DNA of 64,000 nt, from positions 7,688,001-7,752,000 of the forward strand of contig OZ281495.1 of assembly GCA_965637545.1 (NCBI GenBank), read 5' to 3'. Numbering within the stretch: the first letter of the stretch is position 1; each line of letters opens with the position of its first letter. Made by a program: the position numbers and the translations under genes. Of this stretch, positions 1-64,000 are shown in pieces. The notes under the pieces are model-generated. The model had not been told where the DNA came from and ran no database searches. It saw only the letters and a program-made list of their open reading frames with translations. Source of the DNA: Phallusia mammillata (Eukaryota).

Positions 1-60
1 ATACTAAATTTTGGCATACTACGAAGTAAGTGTTTTGTAAATCTTCTTAAGAAAACATAC

Positions 61-470
61 CTATAGTGGAGTTGAGCGAAACAGGAAAGTTGAAAATTCG
101 ATTTACATCTGATCCAAGATCCTATATGGGAAATTACATGGGTTAGTTAGTTATGTATTATACAATCCCAACTGGCATGATTAAAATTCATTTGAAAACA
201 TTAACGAGTGGGTAGGCCTATAGTTTTTGTACTCTCAGTTAACGAATTAGTAAGATATGTCATCAACCCTTGATTACCTGCATCGATAAGGACCAAACTC
301 TTAGGTCAAGACACCTGTAAAAAGCACAGTTGCAGATTAATGCATACATTACCCAACAACACACTTTCTGCTATCTCTTACCTCTCTTTCTCTAACCGCA
401 CTGTAGGTACAGGTATAAAAATGCCCTCCTCGTTGCCACATTTTGTCCAATACGGATATAAATTCGCCAT
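61..470 (-). CDS. Exons 1-3 (470-382, 314-278, 121-61) of a copy whose remaining exons lie left of the window
   Basis: Same sequence and splice signals as exons 1-3 of copy 1, shifted by 3,323 bp. Confidence 0.8.
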
Positions 471-665
471 TTTGACAGAGCATATAAATGCACGTCTGGT
501 TTTTATTTCCATTTTCAGAAAAATACTCAAAAAGTTAAAAGTTACCATGAAACCGATTATTAGGTAGGAGGCAGTGTGACGTCACATTGCCGCATTTATG
601 ACAAATTTTGGCTGACAAATGTTTGCAAGCATCAGTTTGTTGTGTGTTAAGTACTGGCATTAGAG

Positions 666-730
666 CAGTGGTTCTTAACCTGGGAACTCCAGGGATTCGG
701 CAACGCTGATTCAGGGGTTCGACGAAGGTC
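666..730 (+). mobile_element. One end of a hAT (Charlie/Buster-like) non-autonomous element or MITE; partner TIR absent; present in every unit
   Basis: Begins CAGTGGTTCTTAACCT, resembling Charlie/Buster-type TIRs. Subterminal repeats CAGGGATTCG (690-699) and CAGGGGTTCG (712-721). The flanking 8 bp CATTAGAG fit the Buster nnnTAnnn target. No AGGTTAAGAACCACTG found in the unit. Confidence 0.65.
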
Positions 731-1118
731 CTTTGAAGTATAGAAATATTCGTTTTCGTCAAACTTTACGGATCTTTTGTCGCTTATAAGTAGCATTTTT
801 TTTGCTAAATAGAAAAACACTGTACGTTTGTAACTAGGGTTTTGTATCTTTTTTGACGGAACAAAGAACATTGTGTGAATTGTTCGTAGGCAGCAAAAAC
901 TAATTACTTCATGTTTCTATGAAGTTACTAAAAATACGGAATCAAGGCAATCCTGAAACAAGATGCTCGTATTGTGATGTCAGAACTGTGTTACCATTAA
1001 GTTTAGTGAAAAGCCGGTTATTGCGCGCATCTGCCGAGTTCCGCCGCGCGATTTCAACTTGCCATCTCTACGGACGACGAATTATGACGAGATTGGGTTC
1101 TTCCAGATTTCTATTTTC

Positions 1119-1178
1119 AGTGAAACGGGGTTTCACCGCACGGTGCTGCACCGTTTCACTTGCGCACGGCCGTCAGTG
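1119..1178. other. GC-rich cluster of nested inverted repeats and palindromes; present in every unit
   Basis: AGTGAAACGG (1119-1128) pairs with CCGTTTCACT (1151-1160). GTGAAAC-GGG-GTTTCAC at 1120-1136, ACGGTGC-T-GCACCGT at 1140-1154, TGCGCA at 1161-1166, ACGGCCGT at 1166-1173. Confidence 0.85.
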
Positions 1179-1489
1179 TAATTAATTTCCTTTTCGTTTT
1201 GTGAATTCCAAGTCTGTAAAAGACATCAACTCTTAACCTAAAATATCAACAATATCTTACGTACGTGATACCGTTAACTCTTGAGAAATAATGATTCCAC
1301 AGCACTGTTGCCAATTTATCATTTTTTAGCACTACATTTGACATGTTGTCAAGTTATTTAGCATTACAAATGACATCTAGCAACAAGAGTCAGAAGTTAT
1401 GCGAATTGGATTCGAATAAATACTGCGCATATTATGGATCTCAGTCAAATAGTAACAAGAATTTCTACAAAAAAAGCCCGAGTGTATTT

Positions 1490-1495
1490 TTTATT
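1490..1495 (-). terminator. Polyadenylation hexamer AATAAA about 200 nt after the stop codon, followed by a U/GU-rich tract; present in every unit
   Basis: The minus strand reads AATAAAAAATACACTCGGGCTTTTTTTGTAG, the canonical hexamer plus downstream-element layout. Confidence 0.65.
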
Positions 1496-1513
1496 ACGAT
1501 ACAAAGACACAGG

Positions 1514-1521
1514 ATAAAAAA
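1514..1521 (-). promoter_or_regulatory. CPE-like element UUUUUUAU in the predicted 3' UTR, 18 nt upstream of AATAAA
   Basis: Plus-strand ATAAAAAA at 1514-1521 matches UUUUUAU, but it is a short motif in AT-rich DNA. Confidence 0.35.
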
Positions 1522-1697
1522 TGATGCAAAAAGGAAAAAAAAGAGCAAAACAGCAGTGGTGAGATAGTAATACAACAAGAAAAATCATTTTTTCCTTGTT
1601 TGGAAATTGTAGTGTTTGAAAAAAATCCAGTTGAATCGGGTCAGAGCCTTCTAACTCGTCAAGGCAGCCTGTGACGAACAAGTTCCGTTGAATCCGT

Positions 1698-3793
1698 TTA
1701 CGATACACAGCAATTAATCCTAAATCGCTTTCGTTTTTTACGTTTAGGCTTTTTGCTGTCGGAAGCATCTTTCAGTGTGCCATTTTGATCTTGCTCCGGA
1801 GTAACGTCCATTGATTGAATTAGAGAATCTTTCTCGACTTTGCCTTGCGATGCCTTTTCGACATCTTTAGTAGGTTTCTCGTCTATGTGCTTATTTGCAA
1901 GGACTCTATCTTCAAGAGGAACAGTTGATTTAGGTTCTTTAGCCTGAGGTTTGGAATCTACAACTGACAGCTGTGCAATGGGCCAACTCGATTGATTCTC
2001 GTTTCCAATCTTTGGCGTTAATGTGTCTTTTTCTTTTGTCGGTTGCTTGAGAGAATTTTTAGTTTCCAATTCCACCGCAGCAGTGGGCAGTTGACCGATT
2101 GCAGAATTTTGTTTCCTCGATTGATCAGCGATTTGTAGTCTTGATCTGTCTTGACTATTTAATCTGTTTTTCCATCTATGAGGTCGTGGCATGACTGGCC
2201 GACTTACTTGGGGCGTCGCGGCAAAAACAAATACCTCAGTAGTTTGTAACTTTTGTGCAGACAACTTTCGTCTGCGTGGTTTTGGTGGTGGAGTTTGTGT
2301 GCTGGAATTCCGCACTTTGACGTTTTCTGCCAGTGGTAAGACGGAACGTGGAATATCTTGAAATCTGTTTAGGTTAAATTGTTTCGTAAACTTGACAATA
2401 GGGCGAATGTAGGTGGAAATAACAGCAGAGGGCGCCGAAGCTGTATCTTGATCACAGCGTATCGGTGGTCCTCTATGAGTTTGTCCACGTTCAGACAACT
2501 GTGGTTTGCCCCATGTCACTAAGGTTGCACCTCTTAATACATCTGGGTCAACGATTGTAGATTGGTTGTGCACAGGGCATTCTGGAACACATTGTATTTC
2601 TGTTCTCAAGCTGGTGGATGTTTTAGTCGTAGCAGCGTATGGCTTCCAGGGATCAGGCCACCTTAGAACCCTTCGATACGGTTTGCTTGGTAAGGGTATA
2701 GCAGTAACTTGAACAACTTCACTTTGTTGAAGTTTATCCCCTTGAGGCTTCAATCGCGGGGTTTGGGTAGTCGAATCCCTTACAATAACAGCTGTGAGAC
2801 CGACAATGAACTGCGTTTGATTGCTACTGAGTAAGTAATTGACCCGCGTCCATCCCGTGTCATTTGAAAGAACTGAATACATATTTTGCATCCATTCCGG
2901 TTTTACTACAGAAGATATTCGAGCTTTGAAAATTATTTTCCAAACTGCTGCAATCTCTTTCCCGTAAAGACCGGATTCGATGTGGGCTGAAAGCGGGCGA
3001 ATTGGACGCCCTGTTTGGAACAGCACTACATCTCTCGGGTGCAACTTTATATATCTTCTGTCAACCGTCTGTGTCAAGAACCAGCTTCCTTGATTATGAC
3101 TCGCTATGATGCAACCTGTTGAGAAACATTGTTTTTCGAGTTAAATTATTATAATAATCAAATATAAATATAAATGTTAGTTTAGGGATCTGCTTCTTAT
3201 TTCTGAGAATATTTTTCTAACTGTGTTGTACCTTTTATGTTTTTCTTTTCGGGAGAGGATAAAGGACTACGCCCAACTGCGTTTGTTGGATCCTCCAAAT
3301 TGGTTTCTATGTAACAAAGTGAAATACTAAATTTTGGCATACTACGAAGTAAGTGTTTTGTAAATCTTCTTAAGAAAACATACCTATAGTGGAGTTGAGC
3401 GAAACAGGAAAGTTGAAAATTCGATTTACATCTGATCCAAGATCCTATATGGGAAATTACATGGGTTAGTTAGTTATGTATTATACAATCCCAACTGGCA
3501 TGATTAAAATTCATTTGAAAACATTAACGAGTGGGTAGGCCTATAGTTTTTGTACTCTCAGTTAACGAATTAGTAAGATATGTCATCAACCCTTGATTAC
3601 CTGCATCGATAAGGACCAAACTCTTAGGTCAAGACACCTGTAAAAAGCACAGTTGCAGATTAATGCATACATTACCCAACAACACACTTTCTGCTATCTC
3701 TTACCTCTCTTTCTCTAACCGCACTGTAGGTACAGGTATAAAAATGCCCTCCTCGTTGCCACATTTTGTCCAATACGGATATAAATTCGCCAT
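1698..3793 (-). CDS. Copy 1 of a predicted 5-exon gene, 559 aa, unknown family, with C-terminal polybasic tract + CCVS. Exons: 3793-3705, 3637-3601, 3444-3384, 3306-3232, 3115-1698
   Basis: ATG in CAAAATGGCG context. Donors GAG|GTAAGA, CAG|GTAATC, TAG|GTATGT, AAG|GTACAA. Acceptors TTTTTACAG|G, TTTCCCATATAG|G, TTTGTTACATAG|A, TTTCTCAACAG|G. Phases 2/0/1/1 join without stops: 89+37+61+75+1418 = 1680 nt. The N-terminal 100 aa are MANLYPYWTKCGNEEGIFIPVPTVRLEKERCLDLRVWSLSMQDLGSDVNRIFNFPVSLNSTIETNLEDPTNAVGRSPLSSPEKKNIKGCIIASHNQGSWF, followed by the track's 459-aa ORF. This copy carries I92V (ORF numbering; C at 2804). Confidence 0.85.
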
Positions 3794-3897
3794 TTTGACA
3801 GAGCATATAAATGCACGTCTGGTTTTTATTTCCATTTTCAGAAAAATACTCAAAAAGTTAAAAGTTACCATGAAACCGATTATTAGGTAGGAGGCAG

Positions 3898-3909
3898 TGT
3901 GACGTCACA
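3898..3909. promoter_or_regulatory. Perfect 12-bp palindrome TGTGACGTCACA containing a full CRE (TGACGTCA), 105 nt upstream of the ATG; present in every unit (first at 575-586)
   Basis: Read directly from the sequence; TGACGTCA is the CREB/ATF/CREM consensus site. Confidence 0.6.
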
Positions 3910-5020
3910 TTGCCGCATTTATGACAAATTTTGGCTGACAAATGTTTGCAAGCATCAGTTTGTTGTGTGTTAAGTACTGGCATTAGAGCAGTGGTTCTTA
4001 ACCTGGGAACTCCAGGGATTCGGCAACGCTGATTCAGGGGTTCGACGAAGGTCCTTTGAAGTATAGAAATATTCGTTTTCGTCAAACTTTACGGATCTTT
4101 TGTCGCTTATAAGTAGCATTTTTTTTGCTAAATAGAAAAACACTGTACGTTTGTAACTAGGGTTTTGTATCTTTTTTGACGGAACAAAGAACATTGTGTG
4201 AATTGTTCGTAGGCAGCAAAAACTAATTACTTCATGTTTCTATGAAGTTACTAAAAATACGGAATCAAGGCAATCCTGAAACAAGATGCTCGTATTGTGA
4301 TGTCAGAACTGTGTTACCATTAAGTTTAGTGAAAAGCCGGTTATTGCGCGCATCTGCCGAGTTCCGCCGCGCGATTTCAACTTGCCATCTCTACGGACGA
4401 CGAATTATGACGAGATTGGGTTCTTCCAGATTTCTATTTTCAGTGAAACGGGGTTTCACCGCACGGTGCTGCACCGTTTCACTTGCGCACGGCCGTCAGT
4501 GTATTTAATTTCCTTTTCGTTTTGTGAATTCCAAGTCTGTAAAAGACATCAACTCTTAACCTAAAATATCAACAATATCTTGCGTACGTGATACCGTTAA
4601 CTCTTGAGAAATAATGATTCCACAGCACTGTTGCCAATTTATCATTTTTTAGCACTACATTTGACATGTTGTCAAGTTATTTAGCATTACAAATGACATC
4701 TAGCAACAAGAGTCAGAAGTTATGCGAATTGGATTCGAATAAATACTGCGCATATTATGGATCTCAGTCAAATAGTAACAAGAATTTCTACAAAAAAAGC
4801 CCGAGTGTATTTTTTATTACGATACAAAGACACAGGATAAAAAATGATGCAAAAAGGAAAAAAAAGAGCAAAACAGCAGTGGTGAGATAGTAATACAACA
4901 AGAAAAATCATTTTTTCCTTGTTTGGAAATTGTAGTGTTTGAAAAAAATCCAGTTGAATCGGGTCAGAGCCTTCTAACTCGTCAAGGCAGCCTGTGACGA
5001 ACAAGTTCCGTTGAATCCGT

Positions 5021-7116
5021 TTACGATACACAGCAATTAATCCTAAATCGCTTTCGTTTTTTACGTTTAGGCTTTTTGCTGTCGGAAGCATCTTTCAGTG
5101 TGCCATTTTGATCTTGCTCCGGAGTAACGTCCATTGATTGAATTAGAGAATCTTTCTCGACTTTGCCTTGCGATGCCTTTTCGACATCTTTAGTAGGTTT
5201 CTCGTCTATGTGCTTATTTGCAAGGACTCTATCTTCAAGAGGAACAGTTGATTTAGGTTCTTTAGCCTGAGGTTTGGAATCTACAACTGACAGCTGTGCA
5301 ATGGGCCAACTCGATTGATTCTCGTTTCCAATCTTTGGCGTTAATGTGTCTTTTTCTTTTGTCGGTTGCTTGAGAGAATTTTTAGTTTCCAATTCCACCG
5401 CAGCAGTGGGCAGTTGACCGATTGCAGAATTTTGTTTCCTCGATTGATCAGCGATTTGTAGTCTTGATCTGTCTTGACTATTTAATCTGTTTTTCCATCT
5501 ATGAGGTCGTGGCATGACTGGCCGACTTACTTGGGGCGTCGCGGCAAAAACAAATACCTCAGTAGTTTGTAACTTTTGTGCAGACAACTTTCGTCTGCGT
5601 GGTTTTGGTGGTGGAGTTTGTGTGCTGGAATTCCGCACTTTGACGTTTTCTGCCAGTGGTAAGACGGAACGTGGAATATCTTGAAATCTGTTTAGGTTAA
5701 ATTGTTTCGTAAACTTGACAATAGGGCGAATGTAGGTGGAAATAACAGCAGAGGGCGCCGAAGCTGTATCTTGATCACAGCGTATCGGTGGTCCTCTATG
5801 AGTTTGTCCACGTTCAGACAACTGTGGTTTGCCCCATGTCACTAAGGTTGCACCTCTTAATACATCTGGGTCAACGATTGTAGATTGGTTGTGCACAGGG
5901 CATTCTGGAACACATTGTATTTCTGTTCTCAAGCTGGTGGATGTTTTAGTCGTAGCAGCGTATGGCTTCCAGGGATCAGGCCACCTTAGAACCCTTCGAT
6001 ACGGTTTGCTTGGTAAGGGTATAGCAGTAACTTGAACAACTTCACTTTGTTGAAGTTTATCCCCTTGAGGCTTCAATCGCGGGGTTTGGGTAGTCGAATC
6101 CCTTACAATAACAGCTGTGAGACCGATAATGAACTGCGTTTGATTGCTACTGAGTAAGTAATTGACCCGCGTCCATCCCGTGTCATTTGAAAGAACTGAA
6201 TACATATTTTGCATCCATTCCGGTTTTACTACAGAAGATATTCGAGCTTTGAAAATTATTTTCCAAACTGCTGCAATCTCTTTCCCGTAAAGACCGGATT
6301 CGATGTGGGCTGAAAGCGGGCGAATTGGACGCCCTGTTTGGAACAGCACTACATCTCTCGGGTGCAACTTTATATATCTTCTGTCAACCGTCTGTGTCAA
6401 GAACCAGCTTCCTTGATTATGACTCGCTATGATGCAACCTGTTGAGAAACATTGTTTTTCGAGTTAAATTATTATAATAATCAAATATAAATATAAATGT
6501 TAGTTTAGGGATCTGCTTCTTATTTCTGAGAATATTTTTCTAACTGTGTTGTACCTTTTATGTTTTTCTTTTCGGGAGAGGATAAAGGACTACGCCCAAC
6601 TGCGTTTGTTGGATCCTCCAAATTGGTTTCTATGTAACAAAGTGAAATACTAAATTTTGGCATACTACGAAGTAAGTGTTTTGTAAATCTTCTTAAGAAA
6701 ACATACCTATAGTGGAGTTGAGCGAAACAGGAAAGTTGAAAATTCGATTTACATCTGATCCAAGATCCTATATGGGAAATTACATGGGTTAGTTAGTTAT
6801 GTATTATACAATCCCAACTGGCATGATTAAAATTCATTTGAAAACATTAACGAGTGGGTAGGCCTATACTTTTTGTACTCTCAGTTAACGAATTAGTAAG
6901 ATATGTCATCAACCCTTGATTACCTGCATCGATAAGGACCAAACTCTTAGGTCAAGACACCTGTAAAAAGCACAGTTGCAGATTAATGCATACATTACCC
7001 AACAACACACTTTCTGCTATCTCTTACCTCTCTTTCTCTAACCGCACTGTAGGTACAGGTATAAAAATGCCCTCCTCGTTGCCACATTTTGTCCAATACG
7101 GATATAAATTCGCCAT
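5021..7116 (-). CDS. Copy 2, intact 559-aa spliced gene
   Basis: Intact 459-aa terminal ORF at 5021-6400; upstream exons and ATG (7116) at the same unit offsets as copy 1. Confidence 0.85.
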
Positions 7117-8343
7117 TTTGACAGAGCATATAAATGCACGTCTGGTTTTTATTTCCATTTTCAGAAAAATACTCAAAAAGTTAAAAGTTACCATGAAACC
7201 GATTATTAGGTAGGAGGCAGTGTGACGTCACATTGCCGCATTTATGACAAATTTTGGCTGACAAATGTTTGCAAGCATCAGTTTGTTGTGTGTTAAGTAC
7301 TGGCATTAGAGCAGTGGTTCTTAACCTGGGAACTCCAGGGATTCGGCAACGCTGATTCAGGGGTTCGACGAAGGTCCTTTGAAGTATAGAAATATTCGTT
7401 TTCGTCAAACTTTACGGATCTTTTGTCGCTTATAAGTAGCATTTTTTTTGCTAAATAGAAAAACACTGTACGTTTGTAACTAGGGTTTTGTATCTTTTTT
7501 GACGGAACAAAGAACATTGTGTGAATTGTTCGTAGGCAGCAAAAACTAATTACTTCATGTTTCTATGAAGTTACTAAAAATACGGAATCAAGGCAATCCT
7601 GAAACAAGATGCTCGTATTGTGATGTCAGAACTGTGTTACCATTAAGTTTAGTGAAAAGCCGGTTATTGCGCGCATCTGCCGAGTTCCGCCGCGCGATTT
7701 CAACTTGCCATCTCTACGGACGACGAATTATGACGAGATTGGGTTCTTCCAGATTTCTATTTTCAGTGAAACGGGGTTTCACCGCACGGTGCTGCACCGT
7801 TTCACTTGCGCACGGCCGTCAGTGTATTTAATTTCCTTTTCGTTTTGTGAATTCCAAGTCTGTAAAAGACATCAACTCTTAACCTAAAATATCAACAATA
7901 TCTTGCGTACGTGATACCGTTAACTCTTGAGAAATAATGATTCCACAGCACTGTTGCCAATTTATCATTTTTTAGCACTACATTTGACATGTTGTCAAGT
8001 TATTTAGCATTACAAATGACATCTAGCAACAAGAGTCAGAAGTTATGCGAATTGGATTCGAATAAATACTGCGCATATTATGGATCTCAGTCAAATAGTA
8101 ACAAGAATTTCTACAAAAAAAGCCCGAGTGTATTTTTTATTACGATACAAAGACACAGGATAAAAAATGATGCAAAAAGGAAAAAAAAGAGCAAAACAGC
8201 AGTGGTGAGATAGTAATACAACAAGAAAAATCATTTTTTCCTTGTTTGGAAATTGTAGTGTTTGAAAAAAATCCAGTTGAATCGGGTCAGAGCCTTCTAA
8301 CTCGTCAAGGCAGCCTGTGACGAACAAGTTCCGTTGAATCCGT

Positions 8344-10439
8344 TTACGATACACAGCAATTAATCCTAAATCGCTTTCGTTTTTTACGTTTAGGCTTTTT
8401 GCTGTCGGAAGCATCTTTCAGTGTGCCATTTTGATCTTGCTCCGGAGTAACGTCCATTGATTGAATTAGAGAATCTTTCTCGACTTTGCCTTGCGATGCC
8501 TTTTCGACATCTTTAGTAGGTTTCTCGTCTATGTGCTTATTTGCAAGGACTCTATCTTCAAGAGGAACAGTTGATTTAGGTTCTTTAGCCTGAGGTTTGG
8601 AATCTACAACTGACAGCTGTGCAATGGGCCAACTCGATTGATTCTCGTTTCCAATCTTTGGCGTTAATGTGTCTTTTTCTTTTGTCGGTTGCTTGAGAGA
8701 ATTTTTAGTTTCCAATTCCACCGCAGCAGTGGGCAGTTGACCGATTGCAGAATTTTGTTTCCTCGATTGATCAGCGATTTGTAGTCTTGATCTGTCTTGA
8801 CTATTTAATCTGTTTTTCCATCTATGAGGTCGTGGCATGACTGGCCGACTTACTTGGGGCGTCGCGGCAAAAACAAATACCTCAGTAGTTTGTAACTTTT
8901 GTGCAGACAACTTTCGTCTGCGTGGTTTTGGTGGTGGAGTTTGTGTGCTGGAATTCCGCACTTTGACGTTTTCTGCCAGTGGTAAGACGGAACGTGGAAT
9001 ATCTTGAAATCTGTTTAGGTTAAATTGTTTCGTAAACTTGACAATAGGGCGAATGTAGGTGGAAATAACAGCAGAGGGCGCCGAAGCTGTATCTTGATCA
9101 CAGCGTATCGGTGGTCCTCTATGAGTTTGTCCACGTTCAGACAACTGTGGTTTGCCCCATGTCACTAAGGTTGCACCTCTTAATACATCTGGGTCAACGA
9201 TTGTAGATTGGTTGTGCACAGGGCATTCTGGAACACATTGTATTTCTGTTCTCAAGCTGGTGGATGTTTTAGTCGTAGCAGCGTATGGCTTCCAGGGATC
9301 AGGCCACCTTAGAACCCTTCGATACGGTTTGCTTGGTAAGGGTATAGCAGTAACTTGAACAACTTCACTTTGTTGAAGTTTATCCCCTTGAGGCTTCAAT
9401 CGCGGGGTTTGGGTAGTCGAATCCCTTACAATAACAGCTGTGAGACCGATAATGAACTGCGTTTGATTGCTACTGAGTAAGTAATTGACCCGCGTCCATC
9501 CCGTGTCATTTGAAAGAACTGAATACATATTTTGCATCCATTCCGGTTTTACTACAGAAGATATTCGAGCTTTGAAAATTATTTTCCAAACTGCTGCAAT
9601 CTCTTTCCCGTAAAGACCGGATTCGATGTGGGCTGAAAGCGGGCGAATTGGACGCCCTGTTTGGAACAGCACTACATCTCTCGGGTGCAACTTTATATAT
9701 CTTCTGTCAACCGTCTGTGTCAAGAACCAGCTTCCTTGATTATGACTCGCTATGATGCAACCTGTTGAGAAACATTGTTTTTCGAGTTAAATTATTATAA
9801 TAATCAAATATAAATATAAATGTTAGTTTAGGGATCTGCTTCTTATTTCTGAGAATATTTTTCTAACTGTGTTGTACCTTTTATGTTTTTCTTTTCGGGA
9901 GAGGATAAAGGACTACGCCCAACTGCGTTTGTTGGATCCTCCAAATTGGTTTCTATGTAACAAAGTGAAATACTAAATTTTGGCATACTACGAAGTAAGT
10001 GTTTTGTAAATCTTCTTAAGAAAACATACCTATAGTGGAGTTGAGCGAAACAGGAAAGTTGAAAATTCGATTTACATCTGATCCAAGATCCTATATGGGA
10101 AATTACATGGGTTAGTTAGTTATGTATTATACAATCCCAACTGGCATGATTAAAATTCATTTGAAAACATTAACGAGTGGGTAGGCCTATACTTTTTGTA
10201 CTCTCAGTTAACGAATTAGTAAGATATGTCATCAACCCTTGATTACCTGCATCGATAAGGACCAAACTCTTAGGTCAAGACACCTGTAAAAAGCACAGTT
10301 GCAGATTAATGCATACATTACCCAACAACACACTTTCTGCTATCTCTTACCTCTCTTTCTCTAACCGCACTGTAGGTACAGGTATAAAAATGCCCTCCTC
10401 GTTGCCACATTTTGTCCAATACGGATATAAATTCGCCAT
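8344..10439 (-). CDS. Copy 3, intact 559-aa spliced gene
   Basis: Intact terminal ORF at 8344-9723; conserved exon offsets. Confidence 0.85.
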
Positions 10440-11665
10440 TTTGACAGAGCATATAAATGCACGTCTGGTTTTTATTTCCATTTTCAGAAAAATACTCAAA
10501 AAGTTAAAAGTTACCATGAAACCGATTATTAGGTAGGAGGCAGTGTGACGTCACATTGCCGCATTTATGACAAATTTTGGCTGACAAATGTTTGCAAGCA
10601 TCAGTTTGTTGTGTGTTAAGTACTGGCATTAGAGCAGTGGTTCTTAACCTGGGAACTCCAGGGATTCGGCAACGCTGATTCAGGGGTTCGACGAAGGTCC
10701 TTTGAAGTATAGAAATATTCGTTTTCGTCAAACTTTACGGATCTTTTGTCGCTTATAAGTAGCATTTTTTTTGCTAAATAGAAAAACACTGTACGTTTGT
10801 AACTAGGGTTTTGTATCTTTTTTGACGGAACAAAGAACATTGTGTGAATTGTTCGTAGGCAGCAAAAACTAATTACTTCATGTTTCTATGAAGTTACTAA
10901 AAATACGGAATCAAGGCAATCCTGAAACAAGATGCTCGTATTGTGATGTCAGAACTGTGTTACCATTAAGTTTAGTGAAAAGCCGGTTATTGCGCGCATC
11001 TGCCGAGTTCCGCCGCGCGATTTCAACTTGCCATCTCTACGGACGACGAATTATGACGAGATTGGGTTCTTCCAGATTTCTATTTTCAGTGAAACGGGGT
11101 TTCACCGCACGGTGCTGCACCGTTTCACTTGCGCACGGCCGTCAGTGTATTTAATTTCCTTTTCGTTTTGTGAATTCCAAGTCTGTAAAAGACATCAACT
11201 CTTAACCTAAAATATCAACAATATCTTGCGTACGTGATACCGTTAACTCTTGAGAAATAATGATTCCACAGCACTGTTGCCAATTTATCATTTTTTAGCA
11301 CTACATTTGACATGTTGTCAAGTTATTTAGCATTACAAATGACATCTAGCAACAAGAGTCAGAAGTTATGCGAATTGGATTCGAATAAATACTGCGCATA
11401 TTATGGATCTCAGTCAAATAGTAACAAGAATTTCTACAAAAAAAGCCCGAGTGTATTTTTTATTACGATACAAAGACACAGGATAAAAAATGATGCAAAA
11501 AGGAAAAAAAAGAGCAAAACAGCAGTGGTGAGATAGTAATACAACAAGAAAAATCATTTTTTCCTTGTTTGGAAATTGTAGTGTTTGAAAAAAATCCAGT
11601 TGAATCGGGTCAGAGCCTTCTAACTCGTCAAGGCAGCCTGTGACGAACAAGTTCCGTTGAATCGT

Positions 11666-13761
11666 TTACGATACACAGCAATTAATCCTAAATCGCTTTC
11701 GTTTTTTACGTTTAGGCTTTTTGCTGTCGGAAGCATCTTTCAGTGTGCCATTTTGATCTTGCTCCGGAGTAACGTCCATTGATTGAATTAGAGAATCTTT
11801 CTCGACTTTGCCTTGCGATGCCTTTTCGACATCTTTAGTAGGTTTCTCGTCTATGTGCTTATTTGCAAGGACTCTATCTTCAAGAGGAACAGTTGATTTA
11901 GGTTCTTTAGCCTGAGGTTTGGAATCTACAACTGACAGCTGTGCAATGGGCCAACTCGATTGATTCTCGTTTCCAATCTTTGGCGTTAATGTGTCTTTTT
12001 CTTTTGTCGGTTGCTTGAGAGAATTTTTAGTTTCCAATTCCACCGCAGCAGTGGGCAGTTGACCGATTGCAGAATTTTGTTTCCTCGATTGATCAGCGAT
12101 TTGTAGTCTTGATCTGTCTTGACTATTTAATCTGTTTTTCCATCTATGAGGTCGTGGCATGACTGGCCGACTTACTTGGGGCGTCGCGGCAAAAACAAAT
12201 ACCTCAGTAGTTTGTAACTTTTGTGCAGACAACTTTCGTCTGCGTGGTTTTGGTGGTGGAGTTTGTGTGCTGGAATTCCGCACTTTGACGTTTTCTGCCA
12301 GTGGTAAGACGGAACGTGGAATATCTTGAAATCTGTTTAGGTTAAATTGTTTCGTAAACTTGACAATAGGGCGAATGTAGGTGGAAATAACAGCAGAGGG
12401 CGCCGAAGCTGTATCTTGATCACAGCGTATCGGTGGTCCTCTATGAGTTTGTCCACGTTCAGACAACTGTGGTTTGCCCCATGTCACTAAGGTTGCACCT
12501 CTTAATACATCTGGGTCAACGATTGTAGATTGGTTGTGCACAGGGCATTCTGGAACACATTGTATTTCTGTTCTCAAGCTGGTGGATGTTTTAGTCGTAG
12601 CAGCGTATGGCTTCCAGGGATCAGGCCACCTTAGAACCCTTCGATACGGTTTGCTTGGTAAGGGTATAGCAGTAACTTGAACAACTTCACTTTGTTGAAG
12701 TTTATCCCCTTGAGGCTTCAATCGCGGGGTTTGGGTAGTCGAATCCCTTACAATAACAGCTGTGAGACCGATAATGAACTGCGTTTGATTGCTACTGAGT
12801 AAGTAATTGACCCGCGTCCATCCCGTGTCATTTGAAAGAACTGAATACATATTTTGCATCCATTCCGGTTTTACTACAGAAGATATTCGAGCTTTGAAAA
12901 TTATTTTCCAAACTGCTGCAATCTCTTTCCCGTAAAGACCGGATTCGATGTGGGCTGAAAGCGGGCGAATTGGACGCCCTGTTTGGAACAGCACTACATC
13001 TCTCGGGTGCAACTTTATATATCTTCTGTCAACCGTCTGTGTCAAGAACCAGCTTCCTTGATTATGACTCGCTATGATGCAACCTGTTGAGAAACATTGT
13101 TTTTCGAGTTAAATTATTATAATAATCAAATATAAATATAAATGTTAGTTTAGGGATCTGCTTCTTATTTCTGAGAATATTTTTCTAACTGTGTTGTACC
13201 TTTTATGTTTTTCTTTTCGGGAGAGGATAAAGGACTACGCCCAACTGCGTTTGTTGGATCCTCCAAATTGGTTTCTATGTAACAAAGTGAAATACTAAAT
13301 TTTGGCATACTACGAAGTAAGTGTTTTGTAAATCTTCTTAAGAAAACATACCTATAGTGGAGTTGAGCGAAACAGGAAAGTTGAAAATTCGATTTACATC
13401 TGATCCAAGATCCTATATGGGAAATTACATGGGTTAGTTAGTTATGTATTATACAATCCCAACTGGCATGATTAAAATTCATTTGAAAACATTAACGAGT
13501 GGGTAGGCCTATAGTTTTTGTACTCTCAGTTAACGAATTAGTAAGATATGTCATCAACCCTTGATTACCTGCATCGATAAGGACCAAACTCTTAGGTCAA
13601 GACACCTGTAAAAAGCACAGTTGCAGATTAATGCATACATTACCCAACAACACACTTTCTGCTATCTCTTACCTCTCTTTCTCTAACCGCACTGTAGGTA
13701 CAGGTATAAAAATGCCCTCCTCGTTGCCACATTTTGTCCAATACGGATATAAATTCGCCAT
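11666..13761 (-). CDS. Copy 4, intact 559-aa spliced gene
   Basis: Intact terminal ORF at 11666-13045; the 1-bp deletion near 11663 lies just past the stop codon. Confidence 0.85.
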
Positions 13762-14987
13762 TTTGACAGAGCATATAAATGCACGTCTGGTTTTTATTTC
13801 CATTTTCAGAAAAATACTCAAAAAGTTAAAAGTTACCATGAAACCGATTATTAGGTAGGAGGCAGTGTGACGTCACATTGCCGCATTTATGACAAATTTT
13901 GGCTGACAAATGTTTGCAAGCATCAGTTTGTTGTGTGTTAAGTACTGGCATTAGAGCAGTGGTTCTTAACCTGGGAACTCCAGGGATTCGGCAACGCTGA
14001 TTCAGGGGTTCGACGAAGGTCCTTTGAAGTATAGAAATATTCGTTTTCGTCAAACTTTACGGATCTTTTGTCGCTTATAAGTAGCATTTTTTTTGCTAAA
14101 TAGAAAAACACTGTACGTTTGTAACTAGGGTTTTGTATCGTTTTTGACGGAACAAAGAACATTGTGTGAATTGTTCGTAGGCAGCAAAAACTAATTACTT
14201 CATGTTTCTATGAAGTTACTAAAAATACGGAATCAAGGCAATCCTGAAACAAGATGCTCGTATTGTGATGTCAGAACTGTGTTACCATTAAGTTTAGTGA
14301 AAAGCCGGTTATTGCGCGCATCTGCCGAGTTCCGCCGCGCGATTTCAACTTGCCATCTCTACGGACGACGAATTATGACGAGATTGGGTTCTTCCAGATT
14401 TCTATTTTCAGTGAAACGGGGTTTCACCGCACGGTGCTGCACCGTTTCACTTGCGCACGGCCGTCAGTGTATTTAATTTCCTTTTCGTTTTGTGAATTCC
14501 AAGTCTGTAAAAGACATCAACTCTTAACCTAAAATATCAACAATATCTTGCGTACGTGATACCGTTAACTCTTGAGAAATAATGATTCCACAGCACTGTT
14601 GCCAATTTATCATTTTTTAGCACTACATTTGACATGTTGTCAAGTTATTTAGCATTACAAATGACATCTAGCAACAAGAGTCAGAAGTTATGCGAATTGG
14701 ATTCGAATAAATACTGCGCATATTATGGATCTCAGTCAAATAGTAACAAGAATTTCTACAAAAAAAGCCCGAGTGTATTTTTTATTACGATACAAAGACA
14801 CAGGATAAAAAATGATGCAAAAAGGAAAAAAAAGAGCAAAACAGCAGTGGTGAGATAGTAATACAACAAGAAAAATCATTTTTCCTTGTTTGGAAATTGT
14901 AGTGTTTGAAAAAAATCCAGTTGAATCGGGTCAGAGCCTTCTAACTCGTCAAGGCAGCCTGTGACGAACAAGTTCCGTTGAATCCGT

Positions 14988-17084
14988 TTACGATACACAG
15001 CAATTAATCCTAAATCGCTTTCGTTTTTTACGTTTAGGCTTTTTGCTGTCGGAAGCATCTTTCAGTGTGCCATTTTGATCTTGCTCCGGAGTAACGTCCA
15101 TTGATTGAATTAGAGAATCTTTCTCGACTTTGCCTTGCGATGCCTTTTCGACATCTTTAGTAGGTTTCTCGTCTATGTGCTTATTTGCAAGGACTCTATC
15201 TTCAAGAGGAACAGTTGATTTAGGTTCTTTAGCCTGAGGTTTGGAATCTACAACTGACAGCTGTGCAATGGGCCAACTCGATTGATTCTCGTTTCCAATC
15301 TTTGGCGTTAATGTGTCTTTTTCTTTTGTCGGTTGCTTGAGAGAATTTTTAGTTTCCAATTCCACCGCAGCAGTGGGCAGTTGACCGATTGCAGAATTTT
15401 GTTTCCTCGATTGATCAGCGATTTGTAGTCTTGATCTGTCTTGACTATTTAATCTGTTTTTCCATCTATGAGGTCGTGGCATGACTGGCCGACTTACTTG
15501 GGGCGTCGCGGCAAAAACAAATACCTCAGTAGTTTGTAACTTTTGTGCAGACAACTTTCGTCTGCGTGGTTTTGGTGGTGGAGTTTGTGTGCTGGAATTC
15601 CGCACTTTGACGTTTTCTGCCAGTGGTAAGACGGAACGTGGAATATCTTGAAATCTGTTTAGGTTAAATTGTTTCGTAAACTTGACAATAGGGCGAATGT
15701 AGGTGGAAATAACAGCAGAGGGCGCCGAAGCTGTATCTTGATCACAGCGTATCGGTGGTCCTCTATGAGTTTGTCCCACGTTCAGACAACTGTGGTTTGC
15801 CCCATGTCACTAAGGTTGCACCTCTTAATACATCTGGGTCAACGATTGTAGATTGGTTGTGCACAGGGCATTCTGGAACACATTGTATTTCTGTTCTCAA
15901 GCTGGTGGATGTTTTAGTCGTAGCAGCGTATGGCTTCCAGGGATCAGGCCACCTTAGAACCCTTCGATACGGTTTGCTTGGTAAGGGTATAGCAGTAACT
16001 TGAACAACTTCACTTTGTTGAAGTTTATCCCCTTGAGGCTTCAATCGCGGGGTTTGGGTAGTCGAATCCCTTACAATAACAGCTGTGAGACCGATAATGA
16101 ACTGCGTTTGATTGCTACTGAGTAAGTAATTGACCCGCGTCCATCCCGTGTCATTTGAAAGAACTGAATACATATTTTGCATCCATTCCGGTTTTACTAC
16201 AGAAGATATTCGAGCTTTGAAAATTATTTTCCAAACTGCTGCAATCTCTTTCCCGTAAAGACCGGATTCGATGTGGGCTGAAAGCGGGCGAATTGGACGC
16301 CCTGTTTGGAACAGCACTACATCTCTCGGGTGCAACTTTATATATCTTCTGTCAACCGTCTGTGTCAAGAACCAGCTTCCTTGATTATGACTCGCTATGA
16401 TGCAACCTGTTGAGAAACATTGTTTTTCGAGTTAAATTATTATAATAATCAAATATAAATATAAATGTTAGTTTAGGGATCTGCTTCTTATTTCTGAGAA
16501 TATTTTTCTAACTGTGTTGTACCTTTTATGTTTTTCTTTTCGGGAGAGGATAAAGGACTACGCCCAACTGCGTTTGTTGGATCCTCCAAATTGGTTTCTA
16601 TGTAACAAAGTGAAATACTAAATTTTGGCATACTACGAAGTAAGTGTTTTGTAAATCTTCTTAAGAAAACATACCTATAGTGGAGTTGAGCGAAACAGGA
16701 AAGTTGAAAATTCGATTTACATCTGATCCAAGATCCTATATGGGAAATTACATGGGTTAGTTAGTTATGTATTATACAATCCCAACTGGCATGATTAAAA
16801 TTCATTTGAAAACATTAACGAGTGGGTAGGCCTATACTTTTTGTACTCTCAGTTAACGAATTAGTAAGATATGTCATCAACCCTTGATTACCTGCATCGA
16901 TAAGGACCAAACTCTTAGGTCAAGACACCTGTAAAAAGCACAGTTGCAGATTAATGCATACATTACCCAACAACACACTTTCTGCTATCTCTTACCTCTC
17001 TTTCTCTAACCGCACTGTAGGTACAGGTATAAAAATGCCCTCCTCGTTGCCACATTTTGTCCAATACGGATATAAATTCGCCAT
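14988..17084 (-). pseudogene. Copy 5, frameshifted by one extra C at 15775-15777 (real mutation or consensus error)
   Basis: GTCCCACG instead of GTCCACG; the ORF track splits into 201-aa and 263-aa pieces. Confidence 0.5.
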
Positions 17085-18311
17085 TTTGACAGAGCATATA
17101 AATGCACGTCTGGTTTTTATTTCCATTTTCAGAAAAATACTCAAAAAGTTAAAAGTTACCATGAAACCGATTATTAGGTAGGAGGCAGTGTGACGTCACA
17201 TTGCCGCATTTATGACAAATTTTGGCTGACAAATGTTTGCAAGCATCAGTTTGTTGTGTGTTAAGTACTGGCATTAGAGCAGTGGTTCTTAACCTGGGAA
17301 CTCCAGGGATTCGGCAACGCTGATTCAGGGGTTCGACGAAGGTCCTTTGAAGTATAGAAATATTCGTTTTCGTCAAACTTTACGGATCTTTTGTCGCTTA
17401 TAAGTAGCATTTTTTTTGCTAAATAGAAAAACACTGTACGTTTGTAACTAGGGTTTTGTATCTTTTTTGACGGAACAAAGAACATTGTGTGAATTGTTCG
17501 TAGGCAGCAAAAACTAATTACTTCATGTTTCTATGAAGTTACTAAAAATACGGAATCAAGGCAATCCTGAAACAAGATGCTCGTATTGTGATGTCAGAAC
17601 TGTGTTACCATTAAGTTTAGTGAAAAGCCGGTTATTGCGCGCATCTGCCGAGTTCCGCCGCGCGATTTCAACTTGCCATCTCTACGGACGACGAATTATG
17701 ACGAGATTGGGTTCTTCCAGATTTCTATTTTCAGTGAAACGGGGTTTCACCGCACGGTGCTGCACCGTTTCACTTGCGCACGGCCGTCAGTGTATTTAAT
17801 TTCCTTTTCGTTTTGTGAATTCCAAGTCTGTAAAAGACATCAACTCTTAACCTAAAATATCAACAATATCTTGCGTACGTGATACCGTTAACTCTTGAGA
17901 AATAATGATTCCACAGCACTGTTGCCAATTTATCATTTTTTAGCACTACATTTGACATGTTGTCAAGTTATTTAGCATTACAAATGACATCTAGCAACAA
18001 GAGTCAGAAGTTATGCGAATTGGATTCGAATAAATACTGCGCATATTATGGATCTCAGTCAAATAGTAACAAGAATTTCTACAAAAAAAGCCCGAGTGTA
18101 TTTTTTATTACGATACAAAGACACAGGATAAAAAATGATGCAAAAAGGAAAAAAAAGAGCAAAACAGCAGTGGTGAGATAGTAATACAACAAGAAAAATC
18201 ATTTTTTCCTTGTTTGGAAATTGTAGTGTTTGAAAAAAATCCAGTTGAATCGGGTCAGAGCCTTCTAACTCGTCAAGGCAGCCTGTGACGAACAAGTTCC
18301 GTTGAATCCGT

Positions 18312-20407
18312 TTACGATACACAGCAATTAATCCTAAATCGCTTTCGTTTTTTACGTTTAGGCTTTTTGCTGTCGGAAGCATCTTTCAGTGTGCCATTTT
18401 GATCTTGCTCCGGAGTAACGTCCATTGATTGAATTAGAGAATCTTTCTCGACTTTGCCTTGCGATGCCTTTTCGACATCTTTAGTAGGTTTCTCGTCTAT
18501 GTGCTTATTTGCAAGGACTCTATCTTCAAGAGGAACAGTTGATTTAGGTTCTTTAGCCTGAGGTTTGGAATCTACAACTGACAGCTGTGCAATGGGCCAA
18601 CTCGATTGATTCTCGTTTCCAATCTTTGGCGTTAATGTGTCTTTTTCTTTTGTCGGTTGCTTGAGAGAATTTTTAGTTTCCAATTCCACCGCAGCAGTGG
18701 GCAGTTGACCGATTGCAGAATTTTGTTTCCTCGATTGATCAGCGATTTGTAGTCTTGATCTGTCTTGACTATTTAATCTGTTTTTCCATCTATGAGGTCG
18801 TGGCATGACTGGCCGACTTACTTGGGGCGTCGCGGCAAAAACAAATACCTCAGTAGTTTGTAACTTTTGTGCAGACAACTTTCGTCTGCGTGGTTTTGGT
18901 GGTGGAGTTTGTGTGCTGGAATTCCGCACTTTGACGTTTTCTGCCAGTGGTAAGACGGAACGTGGAATATCTTGAAATCTGTTTAGGTTAAATTGTTTCG
19001 TAAACTTGACAATAGGGCGAATGTAGGTGGAAATAACAGCAGAGGGCGCCGAAGCTGTATCTTGATCACAGCGTATCGGTGGTCCTCTATGAGTTTGTCC
19101 ACGTTCAGACAACTGTGGTTTGCCCCATGTCACTAAGGTTGCACCTCTTAATACATCTGGGTCAACGATTGTAGATTGGTTGTGCACAGGGCATTCTGGA
19201 ACACATTGTATTTCTGTTCTCAAGCTGGTGGATGTTTTAGTCGTAGCAGCGTATGGCTTCCAGGGATCAGGCCACCTTAGAACCCTTCGATACGGTTTGC
19301 TTGGTAAGGGTATAGCAGTAACTTGAACAACTTCACTTTGTTGAAGTTTATCCCCTTGAGGCTTCAATCGCGGGGTTTGGGTAGTCGAATCCCTTACAAT
19401 AACAGCTGTGAGACCGATAATGAACTGCGTTTGATTGCTACTGAGTAAGTAATTGACCCGCGTCCATCCCGTGTCATTTGAAAGAACTGAATACATATTT
19501 TGCATCCATTCCGGTTTTACTACAGAAGATATTCGAGCTTTGAAAATTATTTTCCAAACTGCTGCAATCTCTTTCCCGTAAAGACCGGATTCGATGTGGG
19601 CTGAAAGCGGGCGAATTGGACGCCCTGTTTGGAACAGCACTACATCTCTCGGGTGCAACTTTATATATCTTCTGTCAACCGTCTGTGTCAAGAACCAGCT
19701 TCCTTGATTATGACTCGCTATGATGCAACCTGTTGAGAAACATTGTTTTTCGAGTTAAATTATTATAATAATCAAATATAAATATAAATGTTAGTTTAGG
19801 GATCTGCTTCTTATTTCTGAGAATATTTTTCTAACTGTGTTGTACCTTTTATGTTTTTCTTTTCGGGAGAGGATAAAGGACTACGCCCAACTGCGTTTGT
19901 TGGATCCTCCAAATTGGTTTCTATGTAACAAAGTGAAATACTAAATTTTGGCATACTACGAAGTAAGTGTTTTGTAAATCTTCTTAAGAAAACATACCTA
20001 TAGTGGAGTTGAGCGAAACAGGAAAGTTGAAAATTCGATTTACATCTGATCCAAGATCCTATATGGGAAATTACATGGGTTAGTTAGTTATGTATTATAC
20101 AATCCCAACTGGCATGATTAAAATTCATTTGAAAACATTAACGAGTGGGTAGGCCTATAGTTTTTGTACTCTCAGTTAACGAATTAGTAAGATATGTCAT
20201 CAACCCTTGATTACCTGCATCGATAAGGACCAAACTCTTAGGTCAAGACACCTGTAAAAAGCACAGTTGCAGATTAATGCATACATTACCCAACAACACA
20301 CTTTCTGCTATCTCTTACCTCTCTTTCTCTAACCGCACTGTAGGTACAGGTATAAAAATGCCCTCCTCGTTGCCACATTTTGTCCAATACGGATATAAAT
20401 TCGCCAT
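18312..20407 (-). CDS. Copy 6, intact 559-aa spliced gene
   Basis: Intact terminal ORF at 18312-19691; conserved exon offsets. Confidence 0.85.
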
Positions 20408-21634
20408 TTTGACAGAGCATATAAATGCACGTCTGGTTTTTATTTCCATTTTCAGAAAAATACTCAAAAAGTTAAAAGTTACCATGAAACCGATTATTAG
20501 GTAGGAGGCAGTGTGACGTCACATTGCCGCATTTATGACAAATTTTGGCTGACAAATGTTTGCAAGCATCAGTTTGTTGTGTGTTAAGTACTGGCATTAG
20601 AGCAGTGGTTCTTAACCTGGGAACTCCAGGGATTCGGCAACGCTGATTCAGGGGTTCGACGAAGGTCCTTTGAAGTATAGAAATATTCGTTTTCGTCAAA
20701 CTTTACGGATCTTTTGTCGCTTATAAGTAGCATTTTTTTTGCTAAATAGAAAAACACTGTACGTTTGTAACTAGGGTTTTGTATCTTTTTTGACGGAACA
20801 AAGAACATTGTGTGAATTGTTCGTAGGCAGCAAAAACTAATTACTTCATGTTTCTATGAAGTTACTAAAAATACGGAATCAAGGCAATCCTGAAACAAGA
20901 TGCTCGTATTGTGATGTCAGAACTGTGTTACCATTAAGTTTAGTGAAAAGCCGGTTATTGCGCGCATCTGCCGAGTTCCGCCGCGCGATTTCAACTTGCC
21001 ATCTCTACGGACGACGAATTATGACGAGATTGGGTTCTTCCAGATTTCTATTTTCAGTGAAACGGGGTTTCACCGCACGGTGCTGCACCGTTTCACTTGC
21101 GCACGGCCGTCAGTGTATTTAATTTCCTTTTCGTTTTGTGAATTCCAAGTCTGTAAAAGACATCAACTCTTAACCTAAAATATCAACAATATCTTGCGTA
21201 CGTGATACCGTTAACTCTTGAGAAATAATGATTCCACAGCACTGTTGCCAATTTATCATTTTTTAGCACTACATTTGACATGTTGTCAAGTTATTTAGCA
21301 TTACAAATGACATCTAGCAACAAGAGTCAGAAGTTATGCGAATTGGATTCGAATAAATACTGCGCATATTATGGATCTCAGTCAAATAGTAACAAGAATT
21401 TCTACAAAAAAAGCCCGAGTGTATTTTTTATTACGATACAAAGACACAGGATAAAAAATGATGCAAAAAGGAAAAAAAAGAGCAAAACAGCAGTGGTGAG
21501 ATAGTAATACAACAAGAAAAATCATTTTTTCCTTGTTTGGAAATTGTAGTGTTTGAAAAAAATCCAGTTGAATCGGGTCAGAGCCTTCTAACTCGTCAAG
21601 GCAGCCTGTGACGAACAAGTTCCGTTGAATCCGT

Positions 21635-63951: not shown

Positions 63952-64000
63952 CTGTAAAAAGCACAGTTACAGATTAATGCATCATTAACCAGCAACACAC

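What the first reader, a model, noticed from the sequence alone, without database searches (positions are those of the whole stretch)
1698..1754. C-terminus KKPKRKKRKRFRIN-CCVS: polybasic tract plus CCaX prenylation signal
Seen: the last 18 residues contain 10 K/R and end in CCVS-stop. Known: CaaX ending in Ser is a farnesyltransferase substrate. Polybasic + CaaX targets K-Ras4B to the plasma membrane, NLS + CaaX targets lamins and Drosophila Kugelkern to the inner nuclear membrane, and CCaX ends (RalA, brain Cdc42) can also be palmitoylated. Inference: the amplified protein is lipid-anchored at the plasma membrane or nuclear envelope despite lacking a GTPase or lamin domain.
Basis: partly seen in the sequence, partly recalled or inferred. 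Interest (0 to 1): 0.75.

Follow-up and report, generated by a model that had tools for sequence, protein, structure and literature searches.

The report
Lipid-anchor-like tail on amplified orphan gene
A sea-squirt gene of unknown kin, repeated at least 19 times head to tail, ends in a textbook "basic patch plus farnesylation box" membrane-address label, but I found no RNA, so it is not shown that the protein is made.

Summary
On the minus strand, 1698-1754 encodes KKPKRKKRKRFRINCCVS-stop, with 10 K/R in the last 18 residues. All 19 copies of a 3.3-kb tandem unit carry it unchanged.

The tail closes a 480-codon open frame. That frame is the last exon of a predicted 5-exon, 559-aa gene with all GT-AG introns and an AATAAA 203 nt after the stop. 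Exons are 43% GC and introns 30%.

Copies differ almost only in non-coding DNA: 33 variable sites there against 3 in exons. This argues for constraint on the exons.

The protein is an orphan. Pfam, PDB sequences, a word search, a full HMMER scan of 1.84 billion proteins and the ESM Atlas all gave nothing. So it has no GTPase, lamin or phosphatase domain and no hydrophobic anchor.

In a published screen of all 8000 CXXX ends, CCVS passes the farnesylation cut-off (3.73 against 3) and scores high in the Ras-type assay.

Weak points:
- No RNA run holds the gene.
- 3 of 17 evaluable copies are frameshifted before the tail.
- A roughly 4% diverged relative exists in one public run, but I could not read it.

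Verdict: a plausible but unproven farnesyl plus polybasic/NLS tail. It is a new member of a known kind of signal.

The parts
1698..1754 (-). The finding: codons for KKPKRKKRKRFRINCCVS plus the TAA stop. It combines a polybasic/NLS-like block with a CCVS CaaX box.
   Evidence: Identical in 19 of 19 units.
1698..3115 (-). Predicted last exon (exon 5, 1418 nt), which holds the 459-aa ORF listed by the ORF tool. It follows the acceptor ttctcaacag.
   Evidence: Only 3 variable substitution sites in 1418 nt among the units.
3232..3306 (-). Predicted exon 4 (75 nt). Its donor AAG|GTACAA is weak.
   Evidence: No variation among units.
3384..3444 (-). Predicted exon 3 (61 nt).
   Evidence: No variation among units.
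3601..3637 (-). Predicted exon 2 (37 nt).
   Evidence: No variation among units.
3705..3793 (-). Predicted exon 1 from ATG 3793. The start is uncertain because in-frame ATGs also lie at 3835 and 3871.
1490..1495 (-). AATAAA polyadenylation signal 203 nt after the stop.
3893..3914 (.). Near-perfect 22-nt palindrome centred on a consensus CRE (TGACGTCA), 114 nt upstream of ATG 3793. It is a candidate promoter element.
1..64000 (-). Tandem array of 19 units of about 3323 nt, cut at both window ends. Units differ by 0-21 mismatches. Of 17 evaluable copies, 14 encode the full 559-aa protein with the tail.
15775..15777 (-). One extra G in unit 5. The frame breaks and the product stops after 301 residues without the tail.
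45704..45706 (-). One extra A in unit 14, with the same change at about 55709-55711 in unit 17. The product stops after 479 residues without the tail.

Best explanation
Each 3.3-kb unit carries a lineage-restricted, spliced gene for a basic (pI 9.9), mostly disordered protein of about 63 kDa with no known domain and no hydrophobic segment. Its C-terminus is a two-part address label. Inferred mechanism: cytosolic farnesyltransferase puts a C15 farnesyl on Cys556 of CCVS. After that, either the canonical route removes -CVS and methylates the new end, or the neighbouring Cys557 is palmitoylated as in other CCaX proteins. The adjacent block of 10 K/R adds electrostatic binding to acidic membranes and also reads as a classical nuclear import signal. 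The protein would then sit on the inner nuclear membrane (as GFP-NLS-CaaX, lamin B and Kugelkern do) or on the plasma and endosomal membranes (as K-Ras4B and PRL phosphatases do). It would go to the nucleus when not farnesylated. I put nuclear envelope against plasma membrane at roughly even odds. What is shown: the sequence, the gene-like anatomy, the exon-specific lack of variation, the lack of any other domain, and the CXXX score. What is inferred: expression, lipidation and localisation.
For: The tail is exact in 19 of 19 units. The open frame is 480 codons against a shuffled maximum of 183. The 5-exon model has all GT-AG introns and gives 559 aa. Exons are 43% GC, introns 30% and intergenic DNA 38%; AATAAA lies 203 nt after the stop. 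No GT in the last 300 nt of the CDS or the 3'UTR scores as a donor; the four GTs in the last 60 nt score -1.9 to -6.7 against -0.04 to 6.2 for the model donors. Variable substitution sites among units number 33 in 1643 non-coding nt against 3 in 1680 coding nt (Fisher p = 8e-8). All 12-13 variable sites in the span 3116-3793 lie in introns and none in exons 1-4. 14 of 17 evaluable copies are intact. In the full CXXX screen, CCVS has Ydj1 heat-map score 3.73 (the authors' cut-off for farnesylation is 3) and Ras heat-map score 9.93, in the range of CCVQ (10.3), whereas poor motifs such as CCKA and CCWD score about 1 (PMC10320760). Yeast-based predictions were about 75% accurate for human FTase (PMC11152559). 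There is no TM-like segment (maximum 19-residue hydropathy 1.18). The precedents behave as proposed: GFP-NLS-CaaX and Kugelkern act at the nuclear membrane (PMC2947476). PRL-3 (CCVM plus a polybasic NLS) is on membranes when farnesylated and nuclear when not (PMC5095905).
Against: No run on record as RNA holds the gene. Twelve probable RNA runs with the same species label hold next to none of its words, and the one I laid (X4) put nothing on the gene. There are no relatives in any protein resource, so conservation of the tail cannot be shown. Three of 17 evaluable copies are frameshifted upstream of the tail. The copies are over 99.4% identical, so intact ORFs could partly reflect youth rather than selection. 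Synonymous sites are as invariant as non-synonymous ones (0 of about 385), which simple protein-level selection does not explain. The basic block is encoded by A-rich DNA and could be a by-product of composition. The start codon is uncertain.
Confidence: 0.42

Rival explanations
1. The array is a young, silent or nearly silent amplification: a coding macrosatellite or a set of recently duplicated gene copies on their way to decay. The ORF and its tail are intact only because the copies are too young to have decayed, and no protein is made.
For: No RNA holder in two searches; probable RNA runs of the same species label hold none of the words. The protein is absent from all protein collections, including annotation-derived ones. 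Units are over 99.4% identical. Two independent frameshifts affect 3 of 17 copies, and indels are not clearly depleted in exons (2 events against 5 in non-coding DNA). The AF2 model has no confident fold.
Against: Substitutions avoid exons at fine scale: introns have 12-13 variable sites in 416 nt while the interleaved exons 1-4 have 0 in 262 nt, and exon 5 has 3 in 1418 nt. Neutral decay does not predict this. Splice sites, the exon/intron GC contrast, the polyA signal and the promoter-like CRE palindrome are all intact. Tandem repeats are often masked before annotation, and the tissues behind the RNA runs are unknown.
Confidence: 0.3
2. The protein is made, but the basic block works only as a nuclear or nucleolar import signal or as a nucleic-acid-binding tail. 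The terminal CCVS is not farnesylated; it is unmodified, or only S-palmitoylated as in the CCFV end of RhoU/Wrch-1.
For: KKPKRKKRKR matches the classical monopartite NLS pattern five times over. The whole protein is basic and disordered like many nuclear proteins. About 6% of human proteins end in CXXX, and most are not known to be prenylated. CXXX-based prediction is about 75% accurate. That RhoU is palmitoylated rather than prenylated comes from my own knowledge and was not checked here.
Against: V at a2 and S at X are among the best FTase determinants, and CCVS passes both published scores. The tail lies in a flexible, accessible, hydrophilic stretch, which is the context FTase needs. PRL-1/2/3 with CCIQ/CCVQ/CCVM are farnesylated.
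Confidence: 0.18
3. The real mRNA ends differently, through an unseen splice out of the last exon or an alternative terminal exon, so the mature protein does not carry this tail.
For: There is no transcript evidence at all.
Against: There is no donor-like GT near the end of the ORF. A canonical AATAAA lies 203 nt downstream. The open frame runs uninterrupted for 480 codons up to this stop.
Confidence: 0.07

Closest known systems
Drosophila Kugelkern (Kuk)
   Same: It has similar size (570 aa against 559 aa) and a lineage-restricted sequence. It has no lamin rod and no enzyme domain, and it carries an NLS plus a C-terminal farnesylation box. Farnesylated Kuk and even GFP-NLS-CaaX bind and deform the nuclear membrane (PMC2947476).
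   Different: There is no sequence similarity. Kuk's NLS (aa 440-447) lies about 120 residues before the CaaX, whereas here it abuts it. Kuk needs a coiled coil (aa 137-184), and none is apparent here, though the AF2 model is of low confidence. Kuk is a single-copy gene expressed in embryos. This gene is amplified at least 19-fold and was not seen in RNA.
PRL phosphatases (PTP4A1-3) C-terminal tail
   Same: They end in CC-aliphatic-X boxes (CCIQ, CCVQ, CCVM) next to a polybasic stretch that doubles as an NLS. Farnesylation holds them on plasma membrane and endosomes, and FTase inhibition sends them to the nucleus. PRL-3 is proposed to be palmitoylated on the second Cys (PMC5095905).
   Different: There is no phosphatase domain and no CX5R motif around any of the 8 Cys. 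The basic block here is much denser and closer to the box.
K-Ras4B / Rac1-type polybasic-CaaX membrane signal
   Same: A farnesyl or geranylgeranyl box is directly preceded by a run of K/R that acts as the second membrane signal. From my own knowledge, the Rac1 basic run is also an NLS.
   Different: There is no G domain. The a1 position is Cys, which allows palmitoylation, a feature K-Ras4B lacks.
B-type lamins
   Same: They combine an NLS with a farnesylated CaaX to target the inner nuclear membrane.
   Different: There is no intermediate-filament rod or Ig-fold tail.
Coding macrosatellites / ampliconic genes (e.g. the 3.3-kb D4Z4-DUX4 repeat, TSPY)
   Same: A kilobase-scale unit, each holding one ORF, is repeated head to tail with near-identical copies and a higher-order repeat. 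The named examples are from my own knowledge.
   Different: The protein content is unrelated. Here each unit holds a spliced 5-exon gene.

Membership tests
CaaX substrates of protein farnesyltransferase | Cys exactly four residues from the C-terminus of the translated protein | tested here: met
   CCVS followed by TAA in 19 of 19 units. This holds on the predicted protein only.
CaaX substrates of protein farnesyltransferase | a2 and X residues accepted by FTase (aliphatic a2; X = S, M, Q, A or C) | tested here: met
   a2 = V and X = S. Ydj1 heat-map score is 3.73 against a cut-off of 3, and Ras heat-map score is 9.93 (PMC10320760).
CaaX substrates of protein farnesyltransferase | The motif is the end of a real, translated mRNA | tested here: inconclusive
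   There is no RNA holder. In favour, there is no nearby donor and a polyA signal lies 203 nt downstream.
CaaX substrates of protein farnesyltransferase | Covalent isoprenoid on the Cys | not testable with these tools
   This needs metabolic or click labelling, a gel shift or mass spectrometry.
Polybasic-prenyl membrane signal (K-Ras4B type) | A cluster of at least 6 K/R within about 15 residues upstream of the CaaX Cys | tested here: met
   10 K/R lie in the 12 residues that end 2 residues before the box.
CCaX dual prenyl/palmitoyl proteins (brain Cdc42, PRL-3) | A second Cys at the a1 position | tested here: met
   Cys556-Cys557. The literature says the dual modification is not general to all CCaX proteins.
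Small GTPases (Ras superfamily) | G domain | tested here: not met
   Pfam gave 0 families at E <= 1. phmmer against 1.84 billion proteins gave 0 hits.
Lamins | Intermediate-filament rod and lamin tail domain | tested here: not met
Kugelkern | Sequence homology to Kuk, including its conserved blocks and coiled coil | tested here: not met
   No hit of any kind. The resemblance is in architecture only.
PRL phosphatases | PTP fold with a CX5R active site | tested here: not met
   Pfam found nothing. None of the 8 Cys has R at +6 (sequence).

The most novel reading that the evidence does not exclude
A chordate-lineage orphan protein, functionally analogous to Drosophila Kugelkern, arose recently and acquired an NLS-plus-farnesyl tail. 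It was then amplified to tens or hundreds of near-identical copies to supply a burst of inner-nuclear-membrane-binding protein in a tissue not yet sampled by RNA-seq, such as gonad. Alternatively it spreads as a selfish ampliconic germline gene. The exon-only invariance, synonymous sites included, would then reflect selection on the mRNA as well as on the protein.
Probability: 0.15. Interest if true: 0.65.

Novelty: new member of a known kind. Interest (0 to 1): 0.4.

Why it matters
If the protein is made and farnesylated, it would be a rare farnesylated membrane- or lamina-binding protein with no enzymatic or filament domain. It would sit in the closest invertebrate relatives of vertebrates and be encoded by a massively amplified orphan gene. 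That would give a natural case for two questions: how a new protein gains a membrane address from a few terminal codons, and why such a gene is amplified. If it is silent, the array shows only that a perfect-looking targeting signal can sit on a non-functional ORF, which is a useful caution for motif-based scans.

Tried and rejected
- Pfam on the 459-aa ORF gave nothing at E <= 1.
- The word-index protein search gave no hit among 4071 candidates.
- The full HMMER scan of 1.84 billion representatives gave 0 hits.
- PDB sequences gave 0 hits.
- The ESM Atlas, with the whole ORF and with residues 1-125, gave no usable hit.
- Single-sequence AF2 gave mean pLDDT 34, which is unusable, so I ran no fold search.
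- Rfam and tRNA scans of a unit found nothing, so no hidden RNA gene explains the amplification.
- TRF found nothing because its period limit is 500. I mapped the array with the tail pattern instead.
- JGI metagenome contigs held no relative of the protein. A degenerate pattern for KRFRINCCVS-stop had 0 matches there.
- The literature search for 'CCVS' returned only papers where it abbreviates vesicles or vacuoles.
- The GGTase-I CXXX supplement gave only raw counts that I could not turn into a score.
- Read laying on X1-X4 showed DNA contigs only, with no intron-skipping joints.
- I did not scan or fold the full spliced 559-aa protein. Only the last exon (471 aa) was searched, so a domain spanning exons 1-5 could have been missed.
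- GTPase, lamin and PRL membership were considered and rejected.

Full report
**Observation.** The window is one long tandem array.
- The 57 nt at 1698-1754, read on the minus strand, give KKPKRKKRKRFRINCCVS followed by TAA.
- The same 57 nt recur unchanged 19 times. Spacing is 3322-3325 nt, except one unit of 3786 nt that holds an assembly gap (N at 32763-32962, left alone) and one of 3357 nt.
- Units differ from each other by 0-21 mismatches over 3.3 kb. The last three units repeat the three before them exactly, which makes a higher-order repeat.
This is the densest basic cluster in the protein.

**Gene anatomy.**
- The 459-aa ORF given by the ORF tool starts at a bacterial-code TTG, which means nothing here.
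- The frame is open for 480 codons. Shuffles of the unit give a mean of 100 and a maximum of 183.
- The frame begins just after a strong acceptor (ttctcaacag) at 3116.
- Reading the minus strand upstream, I found four short exons with GT-AG borders that join in frame: 3793-3705, 3637-3601, 3444-3384, 3306-3232 and 3115-1698. Together they make 1680 nt, or 559 aa plus stop.
- Exons are 43% GC, introns 30% and intergenic DNA 38%. AATAAA lies 203 nt after the stop.
- A 22-nt palindrome around a consensus CRE (TGACGTCA) lies 114 nt before ATG 3793.
- In-frame ATGs at 3835 and 3871 leave the start open.
- With an approximate textbook donor matrix of my own, no GT between 2000 and 1500 scores above 2. 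The four GTs in the last 60 nt score -1.9 to -6.7, below all four model donors. Nothing in the sequence suggests splicing away from this tail.

**Constraint.**
- Among the units I counted 33 variable substitution sites in 1643 nt of introns plus intergenic DNA, against 3 in 1680 nt of exons (Fisher p = 8e-8).
- Within 3116-3793, where short exons and introns alternate, all 12-13 variable sites lie in introns.
- This is the best evidence that the exon model is right and that the exons are, or recently were, under constraint.
- Two things do not fit simple protein-level selection. First, all three exon changes are non-synonymous (V192I, R236S, N424H), and none of about 385 synonymous sites varies. 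Second, two independent 1-nt insertions break the frame in 3 of 17 evaluable copies: unit 5 stops after 301 residues, and units 14 and 17 after 479. I have no tested explanation for either.
- 14 of 17 evaluable copies encode the full protein with the tail.

**What the protein is.** It is an orphan.
- Pfam gave nothing at E <= 1, and the word-index search gave nothing.
- phmmer against 1.84 billion representative proteins gave no hit at E <= 0.001.
- PDB sequences gave nothing, and the ESM Atlas gave nothing.
- JGI metagenome contigs gave nothing, either for the protein or for a degenerate pattern of the tail.
- Single-sequence AF2 was uninformative, with pLDDT 34.
- The model protein is 63 kDa with pI 9.9. 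Beyond residue 200 it is rich in P, T, Q, S, K and R, and it has no hydrophobic segment (maximum 19-residue hydropathy 1.18).
I did not search the spliced full-length protein, because it has no reference.
- Rfam and tRNA scans found no RNA gene in the unit.
- Earlier notes of this scan call the genome a sea squirt, and one names Phallusia mammillata. I did not check this.

**Is CCVS a farnesylation box?**
- By the established rules, V at a2 and S at X favour farnesyltransferase, and a1 is tolerant.
- In the in vivo screen of all 8000 CXXX ends in yeast (PMC10320760), the supplementary heat-map scores for CCVS are 3.73 (Ydj1 reporter) and 9.93 (Ras reporter). The authors use 3 as the cut-off for farnesylation. 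Poor motifs such as CCKA or CCWD score 1.7-2.5 and about 1.
- The high Ras score suggests the canonical route of prenylation, -aaX cleavage and methylation.
- The same group reports about 75% accuracy of these predictions for human FTase. [quoted passage not shown] Here it sits in a hydrophilic, probably disordered tail.
- The CCaX literature supports optional palmitoylation of the second Cys in brain Cdc42 and PRL-3, but not in every CCaX protein (PMC5095905, PMC9868626).

**Where would it go?**
- The basic block directly abuts the box, as in K-Ras4B, Rac1 and PRL phosphatases. It also matches the classical NLS pattern five times.
- PRL-3 is on plasma membrane and endosomes when farnesylated and nuclear when not.
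- GFP-NLS-CaaX, lamin tails and Kugelkern (570 aa, NLS, CaaX, no lamin domain) act at the nuclear membrane (PMC2947476).
- The sequence cannot decide between these. I put the odds near even.

**Expression.**
- Two searches of public runs found 19 DNA-type holders in 8 studies under four organism labels. None is on record as RNA.
- Twelve small runs guessed to be RNA, with the same species label, hold next to none of the words.
- Laying X1-X4 on 1400-4400 gave DNA contigs that cover the tail without change. It gave no joint at any predicted intron, and X4 put nothing on the gene.
Still, it is the main reason my confidence stays below one half.
- One run of another organism label (X31) holds 27% of the last-exon words, which fits a relative about 4% diverged. 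My single read-laying run was already spent, so I could not test tail conservation.

**Verdict.**
The tail is a very good farnesyl plus polybasic/NLS signal on an otherwise domain-less orphan protein, and the gene looks real and constrained.
- Expression, the true C-terminus, lipidation and localisation remain inferred.
- It is a new member of a known kind of signal. Interest is moderate and would rise if RNA or a conserved ortholog tail is found.

Noticed in passing
window 45359-64000: Higher-order repeat. Units 14-15-16 are repeated as units 17-18-19 with 0 mismatches, including the same frameshift in units 14 and 17.
   Followed up: partly
window 1698-5020 and every other unit: Variation among units avoids exons completely at synonymous sites (0 of about 385), while introns vary at about 3%. 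Yet frameshifting 1-nt insertions occur in 3 copies. Simple protein-level selection does not explain this.
   Followed up: partly
window 3893-3914 (also 570-591 and each unit): A 22-nt near-perfect palindrome centred on a consensus CRE (TGACGTCA) lies 114 nt upstream of the predicted start. A TATA-like TTTATA lies only 18 nt before ATG 3793, which questions that start codon or suggests trans-splicing.
   Followed up: no
window 1119-1160 and 4442-4483: A hairpin with 20-nt arms (80% complementary, 2-nt loop) sits in the intergenic part of every unit.
   Followed up: no
window about 4007-4065: This intergenic segment behaves as a dispersed repeat. Many contigs at 90-95% likeness end or start here with unlike flanks, including in the probable RNA run X4.
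   Followed up: no
window about 54500-54620 (unit 16; unit-1 equivalent 4201-4278): Unit 16 has a 34-nt insertion and a cluster of 9 substitutions within 80 nt. This looks like one conversion or complex event.
   Followed up: no
window 31604-35389: Unit 10 is 463 nt longer than the rest and holds the 200-N assembly gap (32763-32962) inside the last exon.
   Followed up: no
window 2886: In run X1 (organism A) a 1441-nt contig follows the unit from 1603 to 2886 and then continues for 157 letters unlike the window. This may be an array edge, an insertion or a variant copy in that sample.
   Followed up: no
These are candidate LC8-binding sites and were not tested.
   Followed up: no
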